Source: Rebecca billardiae RCC1528 (taxonomy: Eukaryota; Protista; Haptophyta). Taken from it: 64,000 nucleotides of DNA. The DNA is taken from positions 124,001-188,000 of the forward strand of contig OZ251249.1 of assembly GCA_965240325.2 (NCBI GenBank), read 5' to 3'. The translations under genes were made by a program, and so were the position numbers. The notes beneath the pieces were generated by a model. It was not told the origin of the DNA. It saw nothing but the letters and a program-made list of their open reading frames with translations, and made no database searches. This document shows, in pieces, positions 34,412 through 41,109 of the stretch (positions are counted from its first letter, which is position 1; each line of letters opens with the position of its first letter).

Positions 34412-35827
34412 TCAGCGCAGCCCATAGCGCCGCATCAGGGGCGGCAGCTGCACCACACGCTGCGGCGTCTGCTGCACTCCGCCATCGTAGCCCACGCCCA
34501 GGCCGAGCGCGGCCGAACGCAGGCCGCACGCGTACACGCCGGCATCCGCCGTCAAATAGAGGGCGTGGATATAGCCGAGTGAGCAGTCGACCACGTGCGC
34601 ATGCGCGAGCCCCCCCATCCGCCCGGGCAGCGTGTGATCCATTCGGTCCCCCGGCCCCAGCAGGCCGGTGCGGTTGTCCCCAAACGTGTGCACGCTGCCG
34701 TCCGCGCACACCACCGCGCTCGTCCAATAGCCCGCGCTGGCGCGCACGGCACGCATGCCCATCAATGCGTCGATGCGCTTGGGCACCGGGCGAGTAGCCT
34801 CATCACCGTGGCCGAGCGCGCCATGAGAACCGCGACCGAAGGAGTGCACGCCGCCCGCGCTGTAGTTGTAGCCCGCGCTCACGTGCACGGCGCGCACGCC
34901 CGCGAGCGCCTCGATGCGCCGCGGCGTGCGCTGCCGCTGCCCGTCACCGTGGCCAAGGCAGCCGTCGTAGGCCTCCCCGCACGAGTACACTGCGCCGCAC
35001 GCCGAGAGCAGCAGCGTGTGATAGCAGCCCGCGGCCACGCCACCCACGCGCACGCCGTCCAGCGCCTCAATGCGCGTTGGCTGCAGCCGGTCCTTTGTGA
35101 CGCCGTGGCCGAGCATGCCAAAGCCGCCGCGGCCCCAGCTGTACACAGCGCCGGCAGCCGTGAGCGCGAGGCTGTGGTACCAACCGACAGCAACGCCGAC
35201 GACGAGCTCCGCGCCCAGCGCCGCCACCTGCACGAACGCCCGTCGCTCAGCCGTGTCGCCCACGCCCAGCTGGCCGTACTCGTTGCTGCCGCACGCGTAC
35301 ACGGCGCCCGCCTCGCTCAGCGCGAGCAGGTGCTCGCTGCCGGCAGCCACCGCGCACACACGCACAGCCGCTAGGGAGCCGATGCGCCTCGGCAGGAGCA
35401 CGCGGGACTCCCTGCTGAGCTCGGGATGGCCCCATCGCGCGCCGCACGTGTGCACGCCGCCGGTGCTGTCGACAAAGGCGGAAAATCTCATCTCAATCGA
35501 TCGGCCGGCAGCTGCAACGTGCGCGTGCGCGCACGCGAGCTCGAACACGCGCTCGCGTCCAAATAGCTCCTCAGCCCACGTGCGCGTGCCCGCCGGCAGG
35601 GTCGGCGGCAGCGCGGCCTCGTGCCCGCGCGCACGCGAACGCTCGCGCAGCGCGTGCTCGAGCGGCGCGCCGCGGAAGAGGCGAGCGGCGGCGTTGGCGG
35701 CGGCGAGGTCACGCGCGCCGTTGAGGTGGACCAAAATGCGCGCGACGAGATCGGGCGGCAGGTCGGTCAGCCGCACGGCCGCCGTTGCCGAGCGCGCCTT
35801 GCCACGCGCGCGCGTCGTCGGTGCCAT
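34412..35827 (-). CDS. F-box-like + RCC1-repeat protein, copy 6 (in-frame ~5-codon deletion in one blade)
   Basis: Same architecture; SAGYNYSAGGV lacks LVVDA. Confidence 0.88.
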   Translation of the reverse strand: MAPTTRARGKARSATAAVRLTDLPPDLVARILVHLNGARDLAAANAAARLFRGAPLEHALRERSRARGHEAALPPTLPAGTRTWAEELFGRERVFELACAHAHVAAAGRSIEMRFSAFVDSTGGVHTCGARWGHPELSRESRVLLPRRIGSLAAVRVCAVAAGSEHLLALSEAGAVYACGSNEYGQLGVGDTAERRAFVQVAALGAELVVGVAVGWYHSLALTAAGAVYSWGRGGFGMLGHGVTKDRLQPTRIEALDGVRVGGVAAGCYHTLLLSACGAVYSCGEAYDGCLGHGDGQRQRTPRRIEALAGVRAVHVSAGYNYSAGGVHSFGRGSHGALGHGDEATRPVPKRIDALMGMRAVRASAGYWTSAVVCADGSVHTFGDNRTGLLGPGDRMDHTLPGRMGGLAHAHVVDCSLGYIHALYLTADAGVYACGLRSAALGLGVGYDGGVQQTPQRVVQLPPLMRRYGLR

Positions 35828-36594
35828 GCCGGAGAGCGTGCGCGTGGGAGCGGGCGATGGGTGCGGTGGCCCCGATCCGGGCTTTTGTCAAGCGGCCGGA
35901 CCATACGAACCAGATTCAGCCCTTGAGTATTTCCCTACCCCCATGGCTGAGAGTCTGAATAGTAATCAACGACGCGACGAACGATGTAGCGCCCCCTACC
36001 TAACGAGATGCTATTGAGCTGCTCACGCTAAGTGCCATTAGCGCGTGCCTTGATTGCGCGATGAAAACATAGAGGCCGTTCATCGATTGGTGGCAGGCGC
36101 TCTGGCCGTTCTGGCCTCGCGCTGGTTTGGCACGGGCATGTCGTTCATCTCATTGACGTGATGACCCACCCATGCTGCGCCTCGGCCAATCACCAGCCCG
36201 ACATGGCGCAAGGTTTTGGCTAAAGGCTTCTCCAAGCTTATGCGGCTTCGTCGCGGTGAGAAGCGCGTCAATGAGCAAGCGTTCGCCAATCTTTTCCCTC
36301 GCCAGAACCGGCTTCGAGGCCGCTCAGCGAACGCGTGCGAGGCGGCTGATGAGACTCGACCGGCGTGGCGGCCAATCACAGCCTACAATCTCGCTCGAAG
36401 GCAGCGGTTCGGCCCAACCGCTTCTCAGACCTTTCGCGCTAACGAACCCTGGCCAAAAAACCCGCTCGCTGCGCTGCCGCGCTCAACAACGACGTCATTT
36501 CAGCAGACGCTCGCCCGTCTCTCTCCCCCCCCCGCCGGCGAGAGAGCCCCCGTCCAAACCGACCCACAAACACACCCCGCACGCGCGCACCGCC

Positions 36595-39357
36595 ATGGCG
36601 ACCTCCGTCCTCGGGCGCGCGCCCAAGCCGCCGAAGGAGCCGATGCCCATCCTCGAGCCCTCGCAGGACGCGCGCGACCTCCTCGGCCTCTTCCCGACCG
36701 CGCCGGCGCGCAACATCCTCGAGGAGTTCCACGTCGGCCTGCCGGTCATCCTGTGCAGCGTGACGATCTACGCGTGCATGCTCGCCGGCACGTTCGCCGG
36801 GCTGGCGGAGCACAAGGCGCAGCTCCTCCCGCTCGAGCGCACCGCCGCGCTCGCCGCGGGCACCGTCCTCCTCGCGTCCGCGCTCGCGCGCGTCGGCTTC
36901 CTCGTGCGCAACCGCAAGACGCTCAAGCCGACGATGGCGGACATGGCGATGCTGGCGGCGAACACGATGGCGGCGTCGGCGAACCTGATCATGGGCACCG
37001 TCGGCACGCCCATCCTCGTCGACCCGATCACCGGCACCTCCGAGTACATGGTCCGCTGGTGCGAGTGGGGCACGCTCGGCTTCCTGATGACGTTCACCGT
37101 CGAGGCCGTCTCGGCGCGCGCGCTGTCCGGGCCGCTCTCGCTGGGCGTGCTGATGGGCACGGCGTGCGTCGCCGGGTACGTCTTCCCGTTCTGCTCCAAC
37201 ATCTACGTGTGGGGCGCCGCGATGGTCTACGCCTTCGCCGCGTACTCGCACATCTTCCCGCGCTACCTCAAGCGGCGGCGCACGCACCAGGCGGCGTACG
37301 ACAAGTGCGCGTCGCCGTCGGACGTGGCGCAGCTCGTGGCGGAGAAGGTGGCGCACCAGCTGATGGTGTGCTGCCTCGTCATGTGGACCATCATCACCGC
37401 CGACTACTGCGTCACCGCCGCCCTCGCCTACCGCCTCGGCGACGCGTACGGCACGGGCGGCGCGCGGCCGCAGTGGCCGTTTGTGCTCGACTGCTGCCTC
37501 GACGTGGTGGCCAAGCTGTGCTACGCGGCGGTGGTGTCGAGCGCGCACGCGCACGTGCCGGTCGAGGCGGAGAAGCAGCAGACGCGCTGGATCCGCGAGG
37601 CCATGGACACCGTCTGGTCCGGCGCGCGCGACGCCGTGCTCCTCTCTGAGCTGCGCGGCAACGGCACGGTGCGCACGATCGCGTCCGACTCGCTCTCCAA
37701 CGTGGTGCCCAAGGCGGCGGCGCGGCGGTGGACGACGTGGCACGCGCACTACGTGGGCGGCGCCGCGTCGTGGGAGGGCTCCGAGGACACCCTCTCCTCG
37801 CACGGCTCCGTCTCCTCCGCCTCCACCGCCAAGTCGTCCGTGCTCGACGCCCAGGAGGCGCTCGAGACGCTCATCTCGTCGGCGTGGCACCAGTCGATCG
37901 CGGCGGCGCGGCAGGCGGCGAGCCGCAAGGCGGCGGAGGACGAGTTCGGCGCGGAGCTGTACGACGAGGGCGAGAAGCCGGAGCCGCCGCCCGCGCCCGC
38001 CGAGACCATCACGATGCGCTGGGAGCCGCCGCACCGCGCCGGCGCCGCCGAGGGCACGCTGTGCGAGGTGCAGGCGACGCGCTGCACGCGGCGCGTGCCC
38101 GGCCAGGCCAAGCCGGCCAACTTTCTGATCGTGGTGATCCGCGACATCACGGAGCGCGTGCGCACGATCGAGCTGGAGCGCAAGCTGGCCGAGTCGATGG
38201 CGGAGAAGCGGCTGCTCGCCGAGCAGCTCGGCCGCCGGTGCGACGACCACGCCGCGCGCTTCACGCAGCAGGAGGCGCGCTCGGGCGTGCTCTCCGCGCT
38301 CGCGCAGTGCGAGGCGCTCATCGAGTTCCACGTGCAGACGGAGGCGTCGTTCAAGCAGATGAAGGAGGGCAACATGGAGGACGGGCTGCGCGACCTCGCG
38401 GCGAAGCTGCAGCGCACGCTCGGCACCGTCAACTCGGCGGGCATGGCCAAGCACCTCGCCAACGGCACCTACGAGCCCCACGCGCAGGAGCGCGTGGACG
38501 TGGCCGCGCTCCTGTCCGAGTCGCTGGGCCGGCCGCCGCGCTTCTCGCTCCGCGCCGAGCCGAGCGCGCCGTCCGTGTTCGTCGACCCGCAGCTGCTCGT
38601 GTGCGTGCACCGCAACGCGATCGCCAACGCGCTCGAGTTCGGCTGCCGCGAGTCGCCCATCGCCACCTCCGTCCGGCTGCGCGCCAACGGCATGCTCGTC
38701 CTCCGCGTGACCAACGCGCCCGGCCCCGGCCACGAGAAGCTCATGGCCGACGGCGGCGCGGTGTCCAAGCACGTCTTCGAGCGCGGCGCGACGCTGCACG
38801 GCGCGAGCGCGCGCTCGGAGGACGGGCCGAAGGGCGACGGCGGCTGGATCATGCGGCTCTGCGCCGACGCGCTCGGCGGCAAGTGCTCCATCGCCTTCGA
38901 GCCGGACGGCACCGTGTTCGAGCTCAGCTGCCCGGTCGGCGTCGACGGCCCGCCGCCGCGCCGCGCGCCGCCCGCGCGCGCCGCGGGCGTGTGCGACGCG
39001 CTCTCGGAGACGACGTCCGACGACCACCCGGGCTCGCGGTCGGAGCACGCCGAGCTCGAGGAGATCCAGCTCGACGTGCGCCGCGCCGTCGGCCGCCTCA
39101 CGCACGACATCTCCTCCACCGACATGCCGTGGGCGGACGCCAAGCGCGCGCTCGGCACCATCAAGGCGGAGGTCGCCTCGCTGCACGCCGTGTTTGGCGT
39201 GCCAGAGGAGCGCGCCGCCGACGTGGGCGCGCGCGTCGACGCGCTGCTCGAGCTGCGCGACGCGCCGTACGACTTCCGGCGCAGCCCGGCCTGGCTCGAG
39301 CTGCTCGCCTCCGTCCACAAGGCGCTCGGCCCCGCCGCGCCGCGCGACGACGCCTGA
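36595..39357 (+). CDS. Microbial rhodopsin - PAS-like - histidine-kinase-like (HisKA/HATPase) - Hpt-like fusion protein, intronless
   Basis: Helix C YMVRWCEW (37045-37068), helix G LDVVAK with retinal Lys (37513), VIRDITER PAS end, N-box RNAIANA, NAPGPG, VFERG, KGDGGWIM..CA.ALGG. Confidence 0.85.
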   Translation: MATSVLGRAPKPPKEPMPILEPSQDARDLLGLFPTAPARNILEEFHVGLPVILCSVTIYACMLAGTFAGLAEHKAQLLPLERTAALAAGTVLLASALARVGFLVRNRKTLKPTMADMAMLAANTMAASANLIMGTVGTPILVDPITGTSEYMVRWCEWGTLGFLMTFTVEAVSARALSGPLSLGVLMGTACVAGYVFPFCSNIYVWGAAMVYAFAAYSHIFPRYLKRRRTHQAAYDKCASPSDVAQLVAEKVAHQLMVCCLVMWTIITADYCVTAALAYRLGDAYGTGGARPQWPFVLDCCLDVVAKLCYAAVVSSAHAHVPVEAEKQQTRWIREAMDTVWSGARDAVLLSELRGNGTVRTIASDSLSNVVPKAAARRWTTWHAHYVGGAASWEGSEDTLSSHGSVSSASTAKSSVLDAQEALETLISSAWHQSIAAARQAASRKAAEDEFGAELYDEGEKPEPPPAPAETITMRWEPPHRAGAAEGTLCEVQATRCTRRVPGQAKPANFLIVVIRDITERVRTIELERKLAESMAEKRLLAEQLGRRCDDHAARFTQQEARSGVLSALAQCEALIEFHVQTEASFKQMKEGNMEDGLRDLAAKLQRTLGTVNSAGMAKHLANGTYEPHAQERVDVAALLSESLGRPPRFSLRAEPSAPSVFVDPQLLVCVHRNAIANALEFGCRESPIATSVRLRANGMLVLRVTNAPGPGHEKLMADGGAVSKHVFERGATLHGASARSEDGPKGDGGWIMRLCADALGGKCSIAFEPDGTVFELSCPVGVDGPPPRRAPPARAAGVCDALSETTSDDHPGSRSEHAELEEIQLDVRRAVGRLTHDISSTDMPWADAKRALGTIKAEVASLHAVFGVPEERAADVGARVDALLELRDAPYDFRRSPAWLELLASVHKALGPAAPRDDA

Positions 39358-40047: not shown

Positions 40048-41109
40048 CTACTCGGAGGCGCGCGCCGCCGGCTCGTCCCGCGCGCCGCGCGAGCGCAGCC
40101 CCTCGCCCATCCGCCGCAGCGTCGCAAAGTCGGCCGAGTGGCGCGCGGCCAGGTCGGCGAGGCGCGGCGCGGCGGTGAGCAGCGTGAGCGGCGCGCGCAC
40201 GGGCGGGTGGTTGACGATGCGCTCGGGCTCGTCGTACCGCACGACGCGCACCACCGCCTCCGCCGTCTCCCACGCCTCCGAGCCGCCCGACGCTGCCAGC
40301 TCCGCCGCCTGCAGCCCGCTCGAGATTGCAATCTCGAGCCCCATCCCGGTGTCGGTGACGAATCCGGGCGCGACGTGGTGGACGGAGACGGGCCCGCGCT
40401 CGGTCTTCTGCTCGGCGCGGAGCGCGGCAGTGAAGCCCGCGAGGCCGTGCTTCGACGCGGCGTACGCCGTCGCGTACGGCACGCCCGCCTTCCCCGCGAT
40501 CGAGCCCACGTTCACCACGTGCCCGCGCGAGCGGCGCAGCTGCGGCCAGAGCGCGGCGGTGAGCTCGATCGGCGCATGCAGGTTCACGCCGAGCTGGAGC
40601 GCGACGTCGGCGGGGGTCTGCACGTCGAAGGGCTTCCACCGCTCGACGCCCGCGTTGTTCACCAGCAGCAGCGGGCACGCCGCGTCGAAGCCCGCCGCCG
40701 CCGCCGCGGCGAGCGCCGCGCGGTCGGCGGCCGACGCGACGTCCGCGCGGACGGCCGTGACGCTCACCGCCGGGTGCGCGGCGCGGATGTCGGCGGCGAC
40801 GGCCTCGAGCTTGTCGAGCTGGCGCGCGGCAACGATGAGCTTCGACACGCCCTCGCGCGCCAGCGTGCGCGCGATCACCGCGCCGATCCCGCCGGACGCG
40901 CCGGTGACGAGCGCGCACGCGCCCGCCACGTCCGCGACCGGCGGCAGCGTCGCCGCCTCGAGCGCGGCGAAGGCGACGAGCGCGAGCGCGAGCCAGCCGA
41001 GCGAGAGCGGGACGGGGCTCGCGTTGAAGCGCAGCCGCGTGCGCAGCGCCCACGTCGCGAGCACCACGCCCACCGCGAGCGCGATCGGGCGCGCGCCCGC
41101 GCCCTCCAT
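40048..41109 (-). CDS. Short-chain dehydrogenase/reductase with N-terminal membrane anchor
   Basis: TGASGGIG, LVNNAG, GSIAG, YAASK. Confidence 0.93.
   Translation of the reverse strand: MEGAGARPIALAVGVVLATWALRTRLRFNASPVPLSLGWLALALVAFAALEAATLPPVADVAGACALVTGASGGIGAVIARTLAREGVSKLIVAARQLDKLEAVAADIRAAHPAVSVTAVRADVASAADRAALAAAAAAGFDAACPLLLVNNAGVERWKPFDVQTPADVALQLGVNLHAPIELTAALWPQLRRSRGHVVNVGSIAGKAGVPYATAYAASKHGLAGFTAALRAEQKTERGPVSVHHVAPGFVTDTGMGLEIAISSGLQAAELAASGGSEAWETAEAVVRVVRYDEPERIVNHPPVRAPLTLLTAAPRLADLAARHSADFATLRRMGEGLRSRGARDEPAARASE

What the first reader, a model, noticed from the sequence alone, without database searches (positions are those of the whole stretch)
36595..39357. Rhodopsin fused to an apparently phosphorelay-dead histidine kinase
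Seen: an opsin-like block with the Schiff-base Lys (DVVAK) and a Glu at the counterion position (RWCEW), perhaps with an extra N-terminal helix, then PAS-like and HATPase motifs. The H-box position reads RFTQQEARSG (38257-38286), with Gln where the phospho-His is expected (an HE.. motif). The N-box reads NALEF rather than NAxKF/Y. Only a ~40-aa linker lies where a receiver domain could sit. The C-terminal Hpt-like helix reads LGTIKA instead of LHxLKG. Known: green-algal histidine-kinase rhodopsins are Rh-HK-REC(-cyclase). Inference: a light-sensing pseudokinase acting allosterically or in heterodimers; a distinct enzyme-rhodopsin architecture of optogenetic interest.
Basis: partly seen in the sequence, partly recalled or inferred. 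Interest (0 to 1): 0.8.

Follow-up and report, generated by a model that had tools for sequence, protein, structure and literature searches.

The report
Rhodopsin with a dead histidine kinase
This intact gene of a very GC-rich haptophyte alga joins a retinal-type light-sensor domain to a histidine-kinase signalling chain that has lost all three of its phosphate-carrying sites, so it probably signals, if at all, by shape change or partner binding rather than by phosphotransfer.

Summary
Window 36595-39357 (+) is one uninterrupted 920-codon gene, with third-position GC near 1.00 throughout.

- **Light-sensor domain (aa 45-338).** It is an eight-helix microbial rhodopsin. The closest solved structure is rhodopsin phosphodiesterase (Z 24.1). 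The Arg, Glu, Trp, Asp and Schiff-base Lys positions (R154, E157, W158, D303, K307) are all kept.
- **Cytoplasmic part.** It folds as PAS-like domain, DHp hairpin, CA domain, a disordered 30-aa linker, and a four-helix tail.
- **Family.** The gene belongs to a large algal family that Pfam almost entirely misses. Its usual architecture is rhodopsin-PAS-HK-REC-Hpt. This scan had already found that family several times on other DNA of the same genome, as intact paralogs.
- **What is lost here.**
  - The H-box His is Gln559; 68 of 72 family H-boxes have His.
  - The N-box Lys is Glu681, the only acidic residue there among 46 members (43 Lys, 2 Arg).
  - The receiver is deleted.
  - The Hpt His is Gly854.
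- **Closest relatives.** They are pavlovophyte transcripts that lack the H-box and the CA domain altogether, and have Ala at the Hpt His.

So the "phosphorelay-dead" reading is supported by sequence. Retinal binding, ATP binding and the proposed allosteric, heterodimer or decoy mechanism are untested, and a decaying relic is not excluded. I rate it a new variant of a known kind, of moderate interest.

The parts
36595..39357 (+). Complete single-exon coding sequence, 920 aa plus stop
   Evidence: ORF and translation. GC3 is 0.93-1.00 in all 90-nt bins from 36622 to the end and 0.57-0.73 in bins starting 36172-36442. The ATG sits in GCCATGG context. Homology to P0001 begins at 36619.
36727..37608 (+). 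Eight-helix microbial rhodopsin domain (TM0 plus helices A-G and the helix that continues from G), aa 45-338
   Evidence: AF2 model has pLDDT 94.9 and pTM 0.91. The Foldseek top 50 are all microbial rhodopsins. VIA-align gives Rh-PDE 7d7q Z 24.1 over 274 residues and SRII 1h2s Z 21.3, rmsd 2.6. The family profile hits Rh-PDE at E 3.5e-7.
37054..37068 (+). Helix C motif RWCEW: R154 (BR R82 position), E157 (counterion, BR D85 position), W158 (BR W86 position)
   Evidence: It aligns with LMRYAEW of Rh-PDE. Arg is invariant and Glu and Trp are at least 90% conserved in 76 sequences. Coordinates were checked.
37501..37515 (+). Helix G motif DVVAK: D303 (BR D212 position) and K307, the putative Schiff-base lysine
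   Evidence: Lys is invariant in 76 sequences. It aligns with the DxxxK of ChRmine (CDIVAK) and of glycilhalorhodopsin 8xx8.
37585..38145 (+). PAS-like domain with a long inserted helix and a disordered loop, aa 331-517
   Evidence: The AF2 model (mean pLDDT 84) shows five strands plus helices. Foldseek hits to LOV-HK YF1 (4gcz), SB2F1 and WalK span sensor plus kinase. The region is conserved in P0001 and P0002.
38149..38460 (+). DHp-like helical hairpin, aa 519-622
   Evidence: Two long helices at model residues 189-255 and 264-292. HK853, CusS and YycG matches.
38257..38286 (+). Degenerate H-box RFTQQEARSG; Gln559 (38269-38271) stands at the phospho-His position
   Evidence: Family consensus is RFTRHEVKNG, with His in 68 of 72 recognisable H-boxes. 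8 of the window's 19 mismatches at conserved columns fall in aa 549-565.
38482..38943 (+). CA (HATPase_c-like) domain, aa 630-783
   Evidence: Pfam HATPase_c E 9.3e-5, below cut-off. Alpha/beta sandwich in the model. The family profile aligns to the YycG, HprS and 9m08 kinases. 39% identity to P0134 over DHp plus CA.
38614..38643 (+). N-box NAIANALEFG: the Mg-binding Asn678 is kept; the Lys is replaced by Glu681 (38635-38637)
   Evidence: Among family members this position is Lys in 43, Arg in 2 and Glu only in the window. It aligns with K, R or H of solved kinases.
38944..39033 (+). 30-aa disordered linker where relatives carry a receiver-like domain
   Evidence: pLDDT is under 50 at model residues 462-483. 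Alignment A3 shows the family block DD...DENLD...RSANDS...PK missing here. Pfam Response_reg hits 5 of 37 family tails.
39034..39327 (+). Four-helix Hpt-like tail without His, aa 814-911; LGTIKAE at 39151-39171 with Gly854 at the His position
   Evidence: Four helices with pLDDT about 90. hhalign against the family Hpt-like profile gives probability 82%, E 1e-5, with the motif in register. Pfam Hpt hits 6 of 37 family tails, best E 7.5e-7. The tail is conserved in P0001 and P0002, which have Ala there.

Best explanation
The gene encodes an eight-helix, enzyme-rhodopsin-type photoreceptor domain. It has all residues expected for a protonated retinal Schiff base: Lys307, counterions Glu157 and Asp303, and Arg154. 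A helix continuing from helix G joins it to a PAS-like domain, a DHp hairpin, a CA domain and a four-helix Hpt-like tail.

It descends from a large algal family whose normal form is a one-chain phosphorelay: rhodopsin-PAS-HK-REC-Hpt. In this copy every phosphate-carrying site is gone:
- H-box His is Gln559.
- The receiver is deleted.
- Hpt His is Gly854.
- The ATP-contacting N-box Lys is reversed to Glu681.

It therefore cannot run the His-Asp-His relay by itself.

Shown: the architecture, the homology and the losses.

Inferred: it binds retinal, and light-driven movement of helix G is passed through the PAS and DHp coiled coil to a kinase-shaped but catalytically silent module. Its output would be protein-protein contact. 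The likeliest form is dimerising with, or acting as a decoy for, the many intact paralogous rhodopsin kinases of the same genome. This would resemble pseudo-Hpt AHP6 and the non-phosphorylating kinases RetS and DivL in other systems.
For: **Rhodopsin fold and key residues.**

**PAS-DHp-CA fold.**

**Collinearity with an intact relative.** The window aligns from TM0 to the end of CA with Diacronema lutheri KAG8462663.1 (P0011), which keeps FTRHEVKN and NACKYG (30% identity over 799 columns, E 2e-80).

**Loss of catalytic motifs.**
- Gln at the His column, where 68 of 72 have His.
- Glu at the N-box Lys column, where the other 45 have Lys (43) or Arg (2).
- The window keeps 56 of 75 conserved DHp/CA columns. 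Of its 19 mismatches, 8 lie in the H-box and 3 in the N-box, while the G1-, F- and G2-like motifs are kept. That is the pattern of a pseudoenzyme.
- The receiver is missing and the Hpt His is replaced.

**Clade context.** The window groups with P0001, P0003 and P0008 (SH-aLRT 100), and none of them has an H-box. Neighbouring lineages are intact.

**Evidence that the clade is maintained.** The rhodopsin, PAS-like and tail parts are conserved in expressed relatives from transcriptomes. GC3 is about 1.00 across the whole ORF.

**Possible partners.** Earlier scan notes report several intact paralogs in the same genome.
Against: - No expression data for this gene: no RNA run was listed.
- No chromophore, ATP-binding or interaction data exist.
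- The nearest relatives have discarded the H-box and CA. This suggests the kinase module is dispensable in this clade and may be a relic here.
- In a 70% GC genome a long open frame is weak evidence of constraint; a 959-aa antisense ORF overlaps the gene.
- No ortholog carrying the kinase-like part was found, so selection on it could not be measured.
- The partner or decoy mechanism rests only on analogy.
Confidence: 0.6

Rival explanations
1. The kinase-like part, or the whole gene, is an evolutionary relic. The clade lost phosphorelay signalling, and the DHp/CA/Hpt-like modules are decaying without a function of their own. The protein would work only as a rhodopsin-PAS sensor, or not at all.
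For: The closest relatives P0001 and P0002 lack the H-box helix and the whole CA domain. P0003 and P0008 show no sequence beyond the rhodopsin domain, though it is not known whether they are complete. The window has the second-lowest retention of conserved DHp/CA columns among the 38 aligned. No RNA run was listed.
Against: The mismatches cluster in catalytic motifs and are not spread over the fold. The AF2 model of DHp, CA and tail is confident, about 90 in most blocks. GC3 is about 1.00 and there is no frameshift or stop over 920 codons. The His-less tail is conserved across three species-level sequences, with 31 invariant columns.
Confidence: 0.2
2. It is still a phosphorylating enzyme by a non-canonical route. 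It might autophosphorylate on the nearby His552 (seven residues, about two helical turns, before Gln559). Its CA domain might phosphorylate the His of an intact partner in a heterodimer. It might have Ser/Thr kinase activity, as has been claimed for plant phytochromes.
For: His552 lies in the same DHp helix, at i-7 from Gln559. Mg-binding Asn678 and the G1-, F- and G2-like motifs are retained. Glu560 next to the His position is kept.
Against: The column of His552 is not conserved in the family; it is mostly Glu, Ala or Gln. The N-box Lys is reversed to Glu681, unique among 46 members. There is no receiver and no His-bearing Hpt to pass a phosphate on.
Confidence: 0.12
3. The membrane domain has the rhodopsin fold but does not bind retinal, so the protein is not a photoreceptor.
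For: There is no Pfam Bac_rhodopsin hit for this protein, and only 2 of 76 family domains hit it. Identity to solved rhodopsins is 12-14%. Helix F reads W-x6-Y instead of WxxYP. Retinal binding was not tested.
Against: Lys307 and Arg154 are invariant. Glu157, Trp158 and Trp264 are at least 90% conserved across 76 sequences. DVVAK aligns in register with the Schiff-base lysine of ChRmine and 8xx8. Such conservation of buried charged residues is hard to explain without a chromophore.
Confidence: 0.1

Closest known systems
Green-algal histidine kinase rhodopsins (HKR1/COP5-12, Ot-HKR, 2c-Cyclop)
   Same: A microbial rhodopsin is fused in one chain to a two-component histidine-kinase module. The output is enzymatic or sensory, not ion transport (reviews PMC12558739 and PMC8818676).
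   Different: HKRs are described as Rh-HK-REC, with or without a cyclase, and with a working relay. The papers I found describe them from green algae. Here a PAS-like domain lies between rhodopsin and kinase, and the family ends in an Hpt-like domain instead of a cyclase. This copy lacks the His, the receiver and the Hpt His. Direct relatedness to HKRs was not tested.
Rhodopsin phosphodiesterase of Salpingoeca rosetta (PDB 7cj3, 7d7q)
   Same: It is the best sequence-profile hit (E 3.5e-7) and the best structural match (Z 24.1, 274 residues). The match includes the extra N-terminal helix TM0, the RYAEW/RWCEW helix C and the helix extending from helix G.
   Different: The output domain is a phosphodiesterase, not a PAS-kinase chain. 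Identity is 12%.
Intact paralog family rhodopsin-PAS-HK-REC-Hpt (e.g. Diacronema lutheri KAG8462663.1)
   Same: Collinear from TM0 to the end of CA, with 30% identity over 799 columns. The H-box, N-box, G-box and tail motifs are the same kind.
   Different: The paralogs keep RHEVKN, NACKYG, a receiver-like block and LHxLKGD. The window has QQEARS, NALEFG, no receiver and LGTIKAE.
Catalytically silent two-component proteins: pseudo-Hpt AHP6 (Arabidopsis), RetS (Pseudomonas), DivL (Caulobacter), the plant phytochrome kinase-related domain
   Same: They have a kinase or Hpt fold without the phospho-accepting His, and they act through binding or allostery. This is from my own knowledge. RetS and phytochrome A also appear among the structural matches of the model.
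   Different: None of these is fused to a rhodopsin. The resemblance is functional analogy only and was not tested here.
Asp-less receiver-like domains on green-algal and viral channelrhodopsins
   Same: This is another case of a rhodopsin carrying a degenerate two-component domain that probably cannot be phosphorylated (bioRxiv 10.1101/2020.04.15.042127).
   Different: There only a receiver-like domain is present, and the rhodopsin is a channel. Here the receiver is the part that is missing.

Membership tests
Microbial (type-1) rhodopsin | Seven-helix rhodopsin fold | tested here: met
   AF2 pLDDT 94.9. SRII Z 21.3 with rmsd 2.6 over 221 of 225 residues. The top 50 Foldseek hits are all rhodopsins.
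Microbial (type-1) rhodopsin | Lys in helix G at the Schiff-base position, with the Asp four residues before it | tested here: met
   D303 and K307 align with the DxxxK of ChRmine and 8xx8. Lys is invariant in 76 sequences.
Microbial (type-1) rhodopsin | Helix C Arg, carboxylate counterion and Trp (RYxDW type) | tested here: met
   RWCEW aligns with RYAEW of Rh-PDE.
Microbial (type-1) rhodopsin | Covalent retinal binding and a photocycle | not testable with these tools
   This needs expression with retinal and spectroscopy.
Microbial (type-1) rhodopsin | Match to the curated Pfam model Bac_rhodopsin | tested here: not met
   No hit at E <= 10 for the protein. Only 2 of 76 family domains hit.
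Eight-helix enzyme rhodopsins (TM0 type) | An extra N-terminal transmembrane helix that places the N-terminus in the cytoplasm | tested here: met
   There is a helix at aa 45-69 before helix A. Rh-PDE aligns from model residue 8.
Histidine kinase rhodopsin (functional HKR) | DHp with a phospho-accepting His in the H-box | tested here: not met
   Gln559 stands at the His column, where 68 of 72 family members have His.
Histidine kinase rhodopsin (functional HKR) | CA domain with intact ATP-binding N and G boxes | tested here: inconclusive
   The fold and Asn678 are kept, as are the G1-, F- and G2-like motifs. The N-box Lys is Glu681. ATP binding was not measured.
Histidine kinase rhodopsin (functional HKR) | Receiver domain with a phospho-accepting Asp | tested here: not met
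   Only a 30-aa disordered linker lies between CA and the tail.
Algal rhodopsin-PAS-HK-REC-Hpt family (Pfam-invisible; seen earlier in this scan) | Homology across the rhodopsin, PAS-like and DHp/CA parts | tested here: met
   The profile search found 309 representatives. DHp/CA E-values reach 1e-48. The window is collinear with P0011.
Hpt domain | Four-helix bundle with the HxxKG phospho-His motif | tested here: not met
   The helices are predicted and homology to the family tail is supported (82% probability). The motif reads LGTIKAE, with Gly854 for His. There is no Pfam Hpt hit for the window tail.

The most novel reading that the evidence does not exclude
A light-gated pseudokinase: a retinal photoreceptor whose kinase-shaped and Hpt-shaped modules carry no phosphate. 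Instead they bind the DHp or receiver domains of the genome's intact rhodopsin kinases. Light would then tune those relays through a decoy or poison subunit. This would be a photoreceptor counterpart of AHP6, RetS or DivL, in a rhodopsin family that the searchable literature does not describe.
Probability: 0.3. Interest if true: 0.75.

Novelty: new variant of a known kind. Interest (0 to 1): 0.55.

Why it matters
Enzyme rhodopsins are few, and they are sought as optogenetic tools. This gene shows that the little-known haptophyte and other-algal rhodopsin-kinase family also produces members that have given up phosphotransfer while keeping the sensor and the kinase fold.

If the protein is functional, it would be the first rhodopsin-coupled pseudokinase. 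It would also give a natural handle on how a rhodopsin's movement is passed into a DHp coiled coil without catalysis.

If it is a relic, then it and its relatives document stepwise loss of a phosphorelay: first the catalytic residues, then the receiver, then the whole kinase. Either way, it is a useful negative control for biochemical work on the intact paralogs.

Tried and rejected
**Searches that gave nothing**
- Single-sequence searches of the PDB with either half of the protein.
- The ESM Atlas feature search of the membrane domain: no usable hit.
- The word-indexed protein search restricted to aa 545-920.
- RNA evidence: no run was listed.
- The search for related loci in genome contigs confirmed no relative among 19 pattern matches. 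By its description that collection holds only bacteria and archaea, so it could not help.
- Profiles of the family tail against PDB sequences did not recover receiver or Hpt structures. Those labels therefore rest on motif patterns and on Pfam hits in a minority of members.
- tblastn of the N-terminal domain shared by P0001 and P0003 found no upstream exon in the window.

**Ideas rejected**
- The idea that the kinase-like stretch is an unspliced intron, raised because P0001 and P0002 lack it. It was rejected on GC3 of about 1.00 and on homology to family kinases.
- HisKA_2/HWE-type assignment of the H-box. The motif H-E-x-x-N fits the HisKA pattern better, but no Pfam DHp family scored.

**Literature**
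- Four searches found no paper describing this family.
Full report
**Gene model.** The finding sits in one open reading frame. The ATG at 36595 lies in GCCATGG context, and the stop is at 39355-39357, giving 920 aa. The window is about 70% GC, so long open frames are common. A 959-aa antisense ORF overlaps the gene, which makes openness alone weak evidence. Codon-position composition is decisive. GC3 is 0.93-1.00 in every 90-nt bin from 36622 to the stop. Upstream it is 0.57-0.73 in the bins starting 36172-36442 and 0.90 in the bin at 36532. The kinase-like stretch is therefore coding and is not an intron, and the start at 36595 is plausible. Homology to relatives begins at 36619. No RNA run was listed for the locus, so expression is unknown.

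**Rhodopsin domain: family and profile.** Pfam gives no Bac_rhodopsin hit. Single-sequence searches of the PDB give nothing. A word search found three relatives, including a transcript protein of the pavlovophyte Rebecca sp. RCC1486 (P0001). A profile of these against 1.84 billion representatives found 309 proteins at E <= 0.001, many of them 1000-1200 aa long. In an alignment of 76 membrane domains, the Arg of RWCEW and the Lys of DVVAK are invariant. Glu157, Trp158 and Trp264 are at least 90% conserved. The profile of that alignment hits only microbial rhodopsins in the PDB:
- Rhodopsin phosphodiesterase at E 3.5e-7, aligned from TM0 through helix E, with RYAEW over RWCEW.
- ChRmine and glycilhalorhodopsin, with their DxxxK over DVVAK.

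**Rhodopsin domain: structure.** The AF2 model has pLDDT 94.9 and pTM 0.91. It shows eight transmembrane helices and a B-C beta hairpin. All 50 best Foldseek matches are microbial rhodopsins. VIA-align gives Rh-PDE Z 24.1 (274 residues, from model residue 8, so including TM0) and sensory rhodopsin II Z 21.3 (rmsd 2.6 over 221 of 225 residues). By helix-C register, the three pump-motif positions read Glu157, Leu161 and Thr168. That is not a known pump motif; this is my inference from the ungapped helix-C alignment. Retinal binding itself is untested.

**Cytoplasmic part.** The AF2 model (mean pLDDT 84) shows these parts in order:
- a PAS-like domain, aa 331-517;
- two long helices forming a DHp hairpin, aa 519-622;
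- an alpha/beta CA domain, aa 630-783;
- a disordered stretch;
- four helices, aa 814-911.

Foldseek returns WalK, the LOV kinases YF1 and SB2F1, HK853, CusS and YycG. It also returns two kinase-like modules known for non-canonical signalling, plant phytochrome A and RetS.

**The family phosphorelay and what is lost here.** The DHp/CA part matches family members at E down to 1e-48. Their alignment gives the family H-box RFTRHEVKNG and N-box NAVSNACKYG.
- **H-box.** Of 72 recognisable H-boxes, 68 have His. The window has Gln559. P0079 also has Gln, and P0093 has Asp.
- **N-box.** At the Lys column 43 have Lys, 2 have Arg, and only the window has Glu (Glu681). That column aligns with Lys, Arg or His of solved kinases, and Asn678 aligns with their Mg-binding Asn.
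- **Pattern of change.** The window keeps 56 of 75 columns that are at least 80% conserved; the median member keeps 70. Of its 19 mismatches, 8 lie in aa 549-565 and 3 in aa 677-682. The G1-, F- and G2-like motifs are kept.
- **Receiver.** After CA, family members carry a receiver-like block (DD, DENLD, RSANDS, PK) and then LHxLKGD. Pfam recognises Response_reg in 5 and Hpt in 6 of 37 tails, with best E-values of 1.1e-5 and 7.5e-7. The window has only 30 residues in place of the receiver.
- **Tail.** The window's tail aligns with the family Hpt-like profile (hhalign probability 82%, E 1e-5) with LGTIKAE over LHxLKGD. That puts Gly854 at the His.

**Intact relative.** Diacronema lutheri KAG8462663.1 (P0011) is collinear with the window from TM0 to the end of CA and keeps all these motifs.

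**Clade context.** On a tree of the rhodopsin domains, the window groups with P0001, P0003 and P0008 with SH-aLRT 100, on a long stem. None of these has an H-box. Neighbouring lineages, including P0011 and P0013, are intact.
- P0001 and P0002 keep the rhodopsin, the PAS-like part, the end of the DHp helices and the tail, with Ala at the Hpt His. They lack the H-box segment and the whole CA domain.
- P0079 is a 799-aa protein seen in eight metagenome records. It ends right after CA and sits next to an intact relative, so it is an independent loss.

**Interpretation.** Phosphotransfer was abandoned in this pavlovophyte clade, and its modules were then lost to different degrees. The window gene is the most complete survivor. 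Two readings remain.

The first is that the kinase-shaped module has a new, non-catalytic role. In favour:
- Substitutions concentrate in the catalytic motifs.
- The fold prediction is confident.
- The frame is intact with extreme codon bias.
- The His-less tail is conserved.
- Earlier scan notes report several intact paralogs in the same genome that could serve as partners.

The second is that it is a relic. The loss of CA in the sister sequences, the low retention score and the absence of expression data keep this open. I put the functional pseudokinase reading at about 0.6 and the relic at 0.2. Non-canonical phosphorylation, for example on His552 seven residues upstream, gets about 0.1. A non-retinal membrane domain gets about 0.1.

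**Comparison with what is known.** The domain logic is that of histidine kinase rhodopsins. The papers found here describe these as green-algal Rh-HK-REC proteins, with or without a cyclase. This gene fails the membership tests for a functional HKR: no His and no receiver. Its family also differs in having a PAS-like insert and an Hpt-like end. No paper in the library describes the family. The family itself is not new to this scan. Several follow-up reports on other DNA of the same genome describe intact members. What is new here is the phosphorelay-dead variant and the graded loss within its clade.

Noticed in passing
window 38710-38736 (TNAPGPGHE) and family alignment A8: The whole family has an invariant Asn where canonical histidine kinases have the G1-box Asp. 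The family reads INxPG, against the DEG/DNG of YycG. One solved kinase (9m08) also shows Asn there. Whether the intact paralogs bind ATP normally deserves a test.
   Followed up: partly
P0079 (799 aa, eight metagenome or assembly records) and P0093: These are further family members without the H-box His. P0079 reads FARQEVRNG and ends right after the CA domain. P0093 reads FARDEVKDS. P0079 sits beside an intact relative on the tree, so the loss is independent of the window's clade.
   Followed up: partly
P0001 aa 1-156, P0003/P0004 N-termini: The closest relatives share a conserved N-terminal domain of about 150 aa before the rhodopsin, with motifs such as RHHLVIGP and SRVLP. The window gene lacks it, and tblastn did not find it anywhere in the window.
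   Followed up: partly
window 38170-38200 (aa about 526-534): The helix between the PAS-like domain and the H-box carries a nine-residue insertion. Among aligned family members only P0134 shares it, and P0134 is also the best match for the kinase part. Nine residues would shift the coiled-coil register by about half a turn.
   Followed up: no
window 34412-35827 (-): The upstream neighbour is a 471-aa RCC1-repeat protein (RCC1-like domain, E 6e-68) with a short leucine-rich N-terminal segment.
   Followed up: partly
window 40048-41109 (-): The downstream neighbour is a 353-aa short-chain dehydrogenase/reductase (adh_short, E 5e-41) with a predicted N-terminal membrane segment. Some enzymes of this superfamily act on retinol. 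No link to the rhodopsin gene was tested.
   Followed up: no
window 36439-39318 (-): A 959-aa antisense ORF spans almost the whole gene. It is best explained as a by-product of about 70% GC and GC3 near 1.00 on the sense strand. It is a caution for ORF-based gene calling in this genome.
   Followed up: partly
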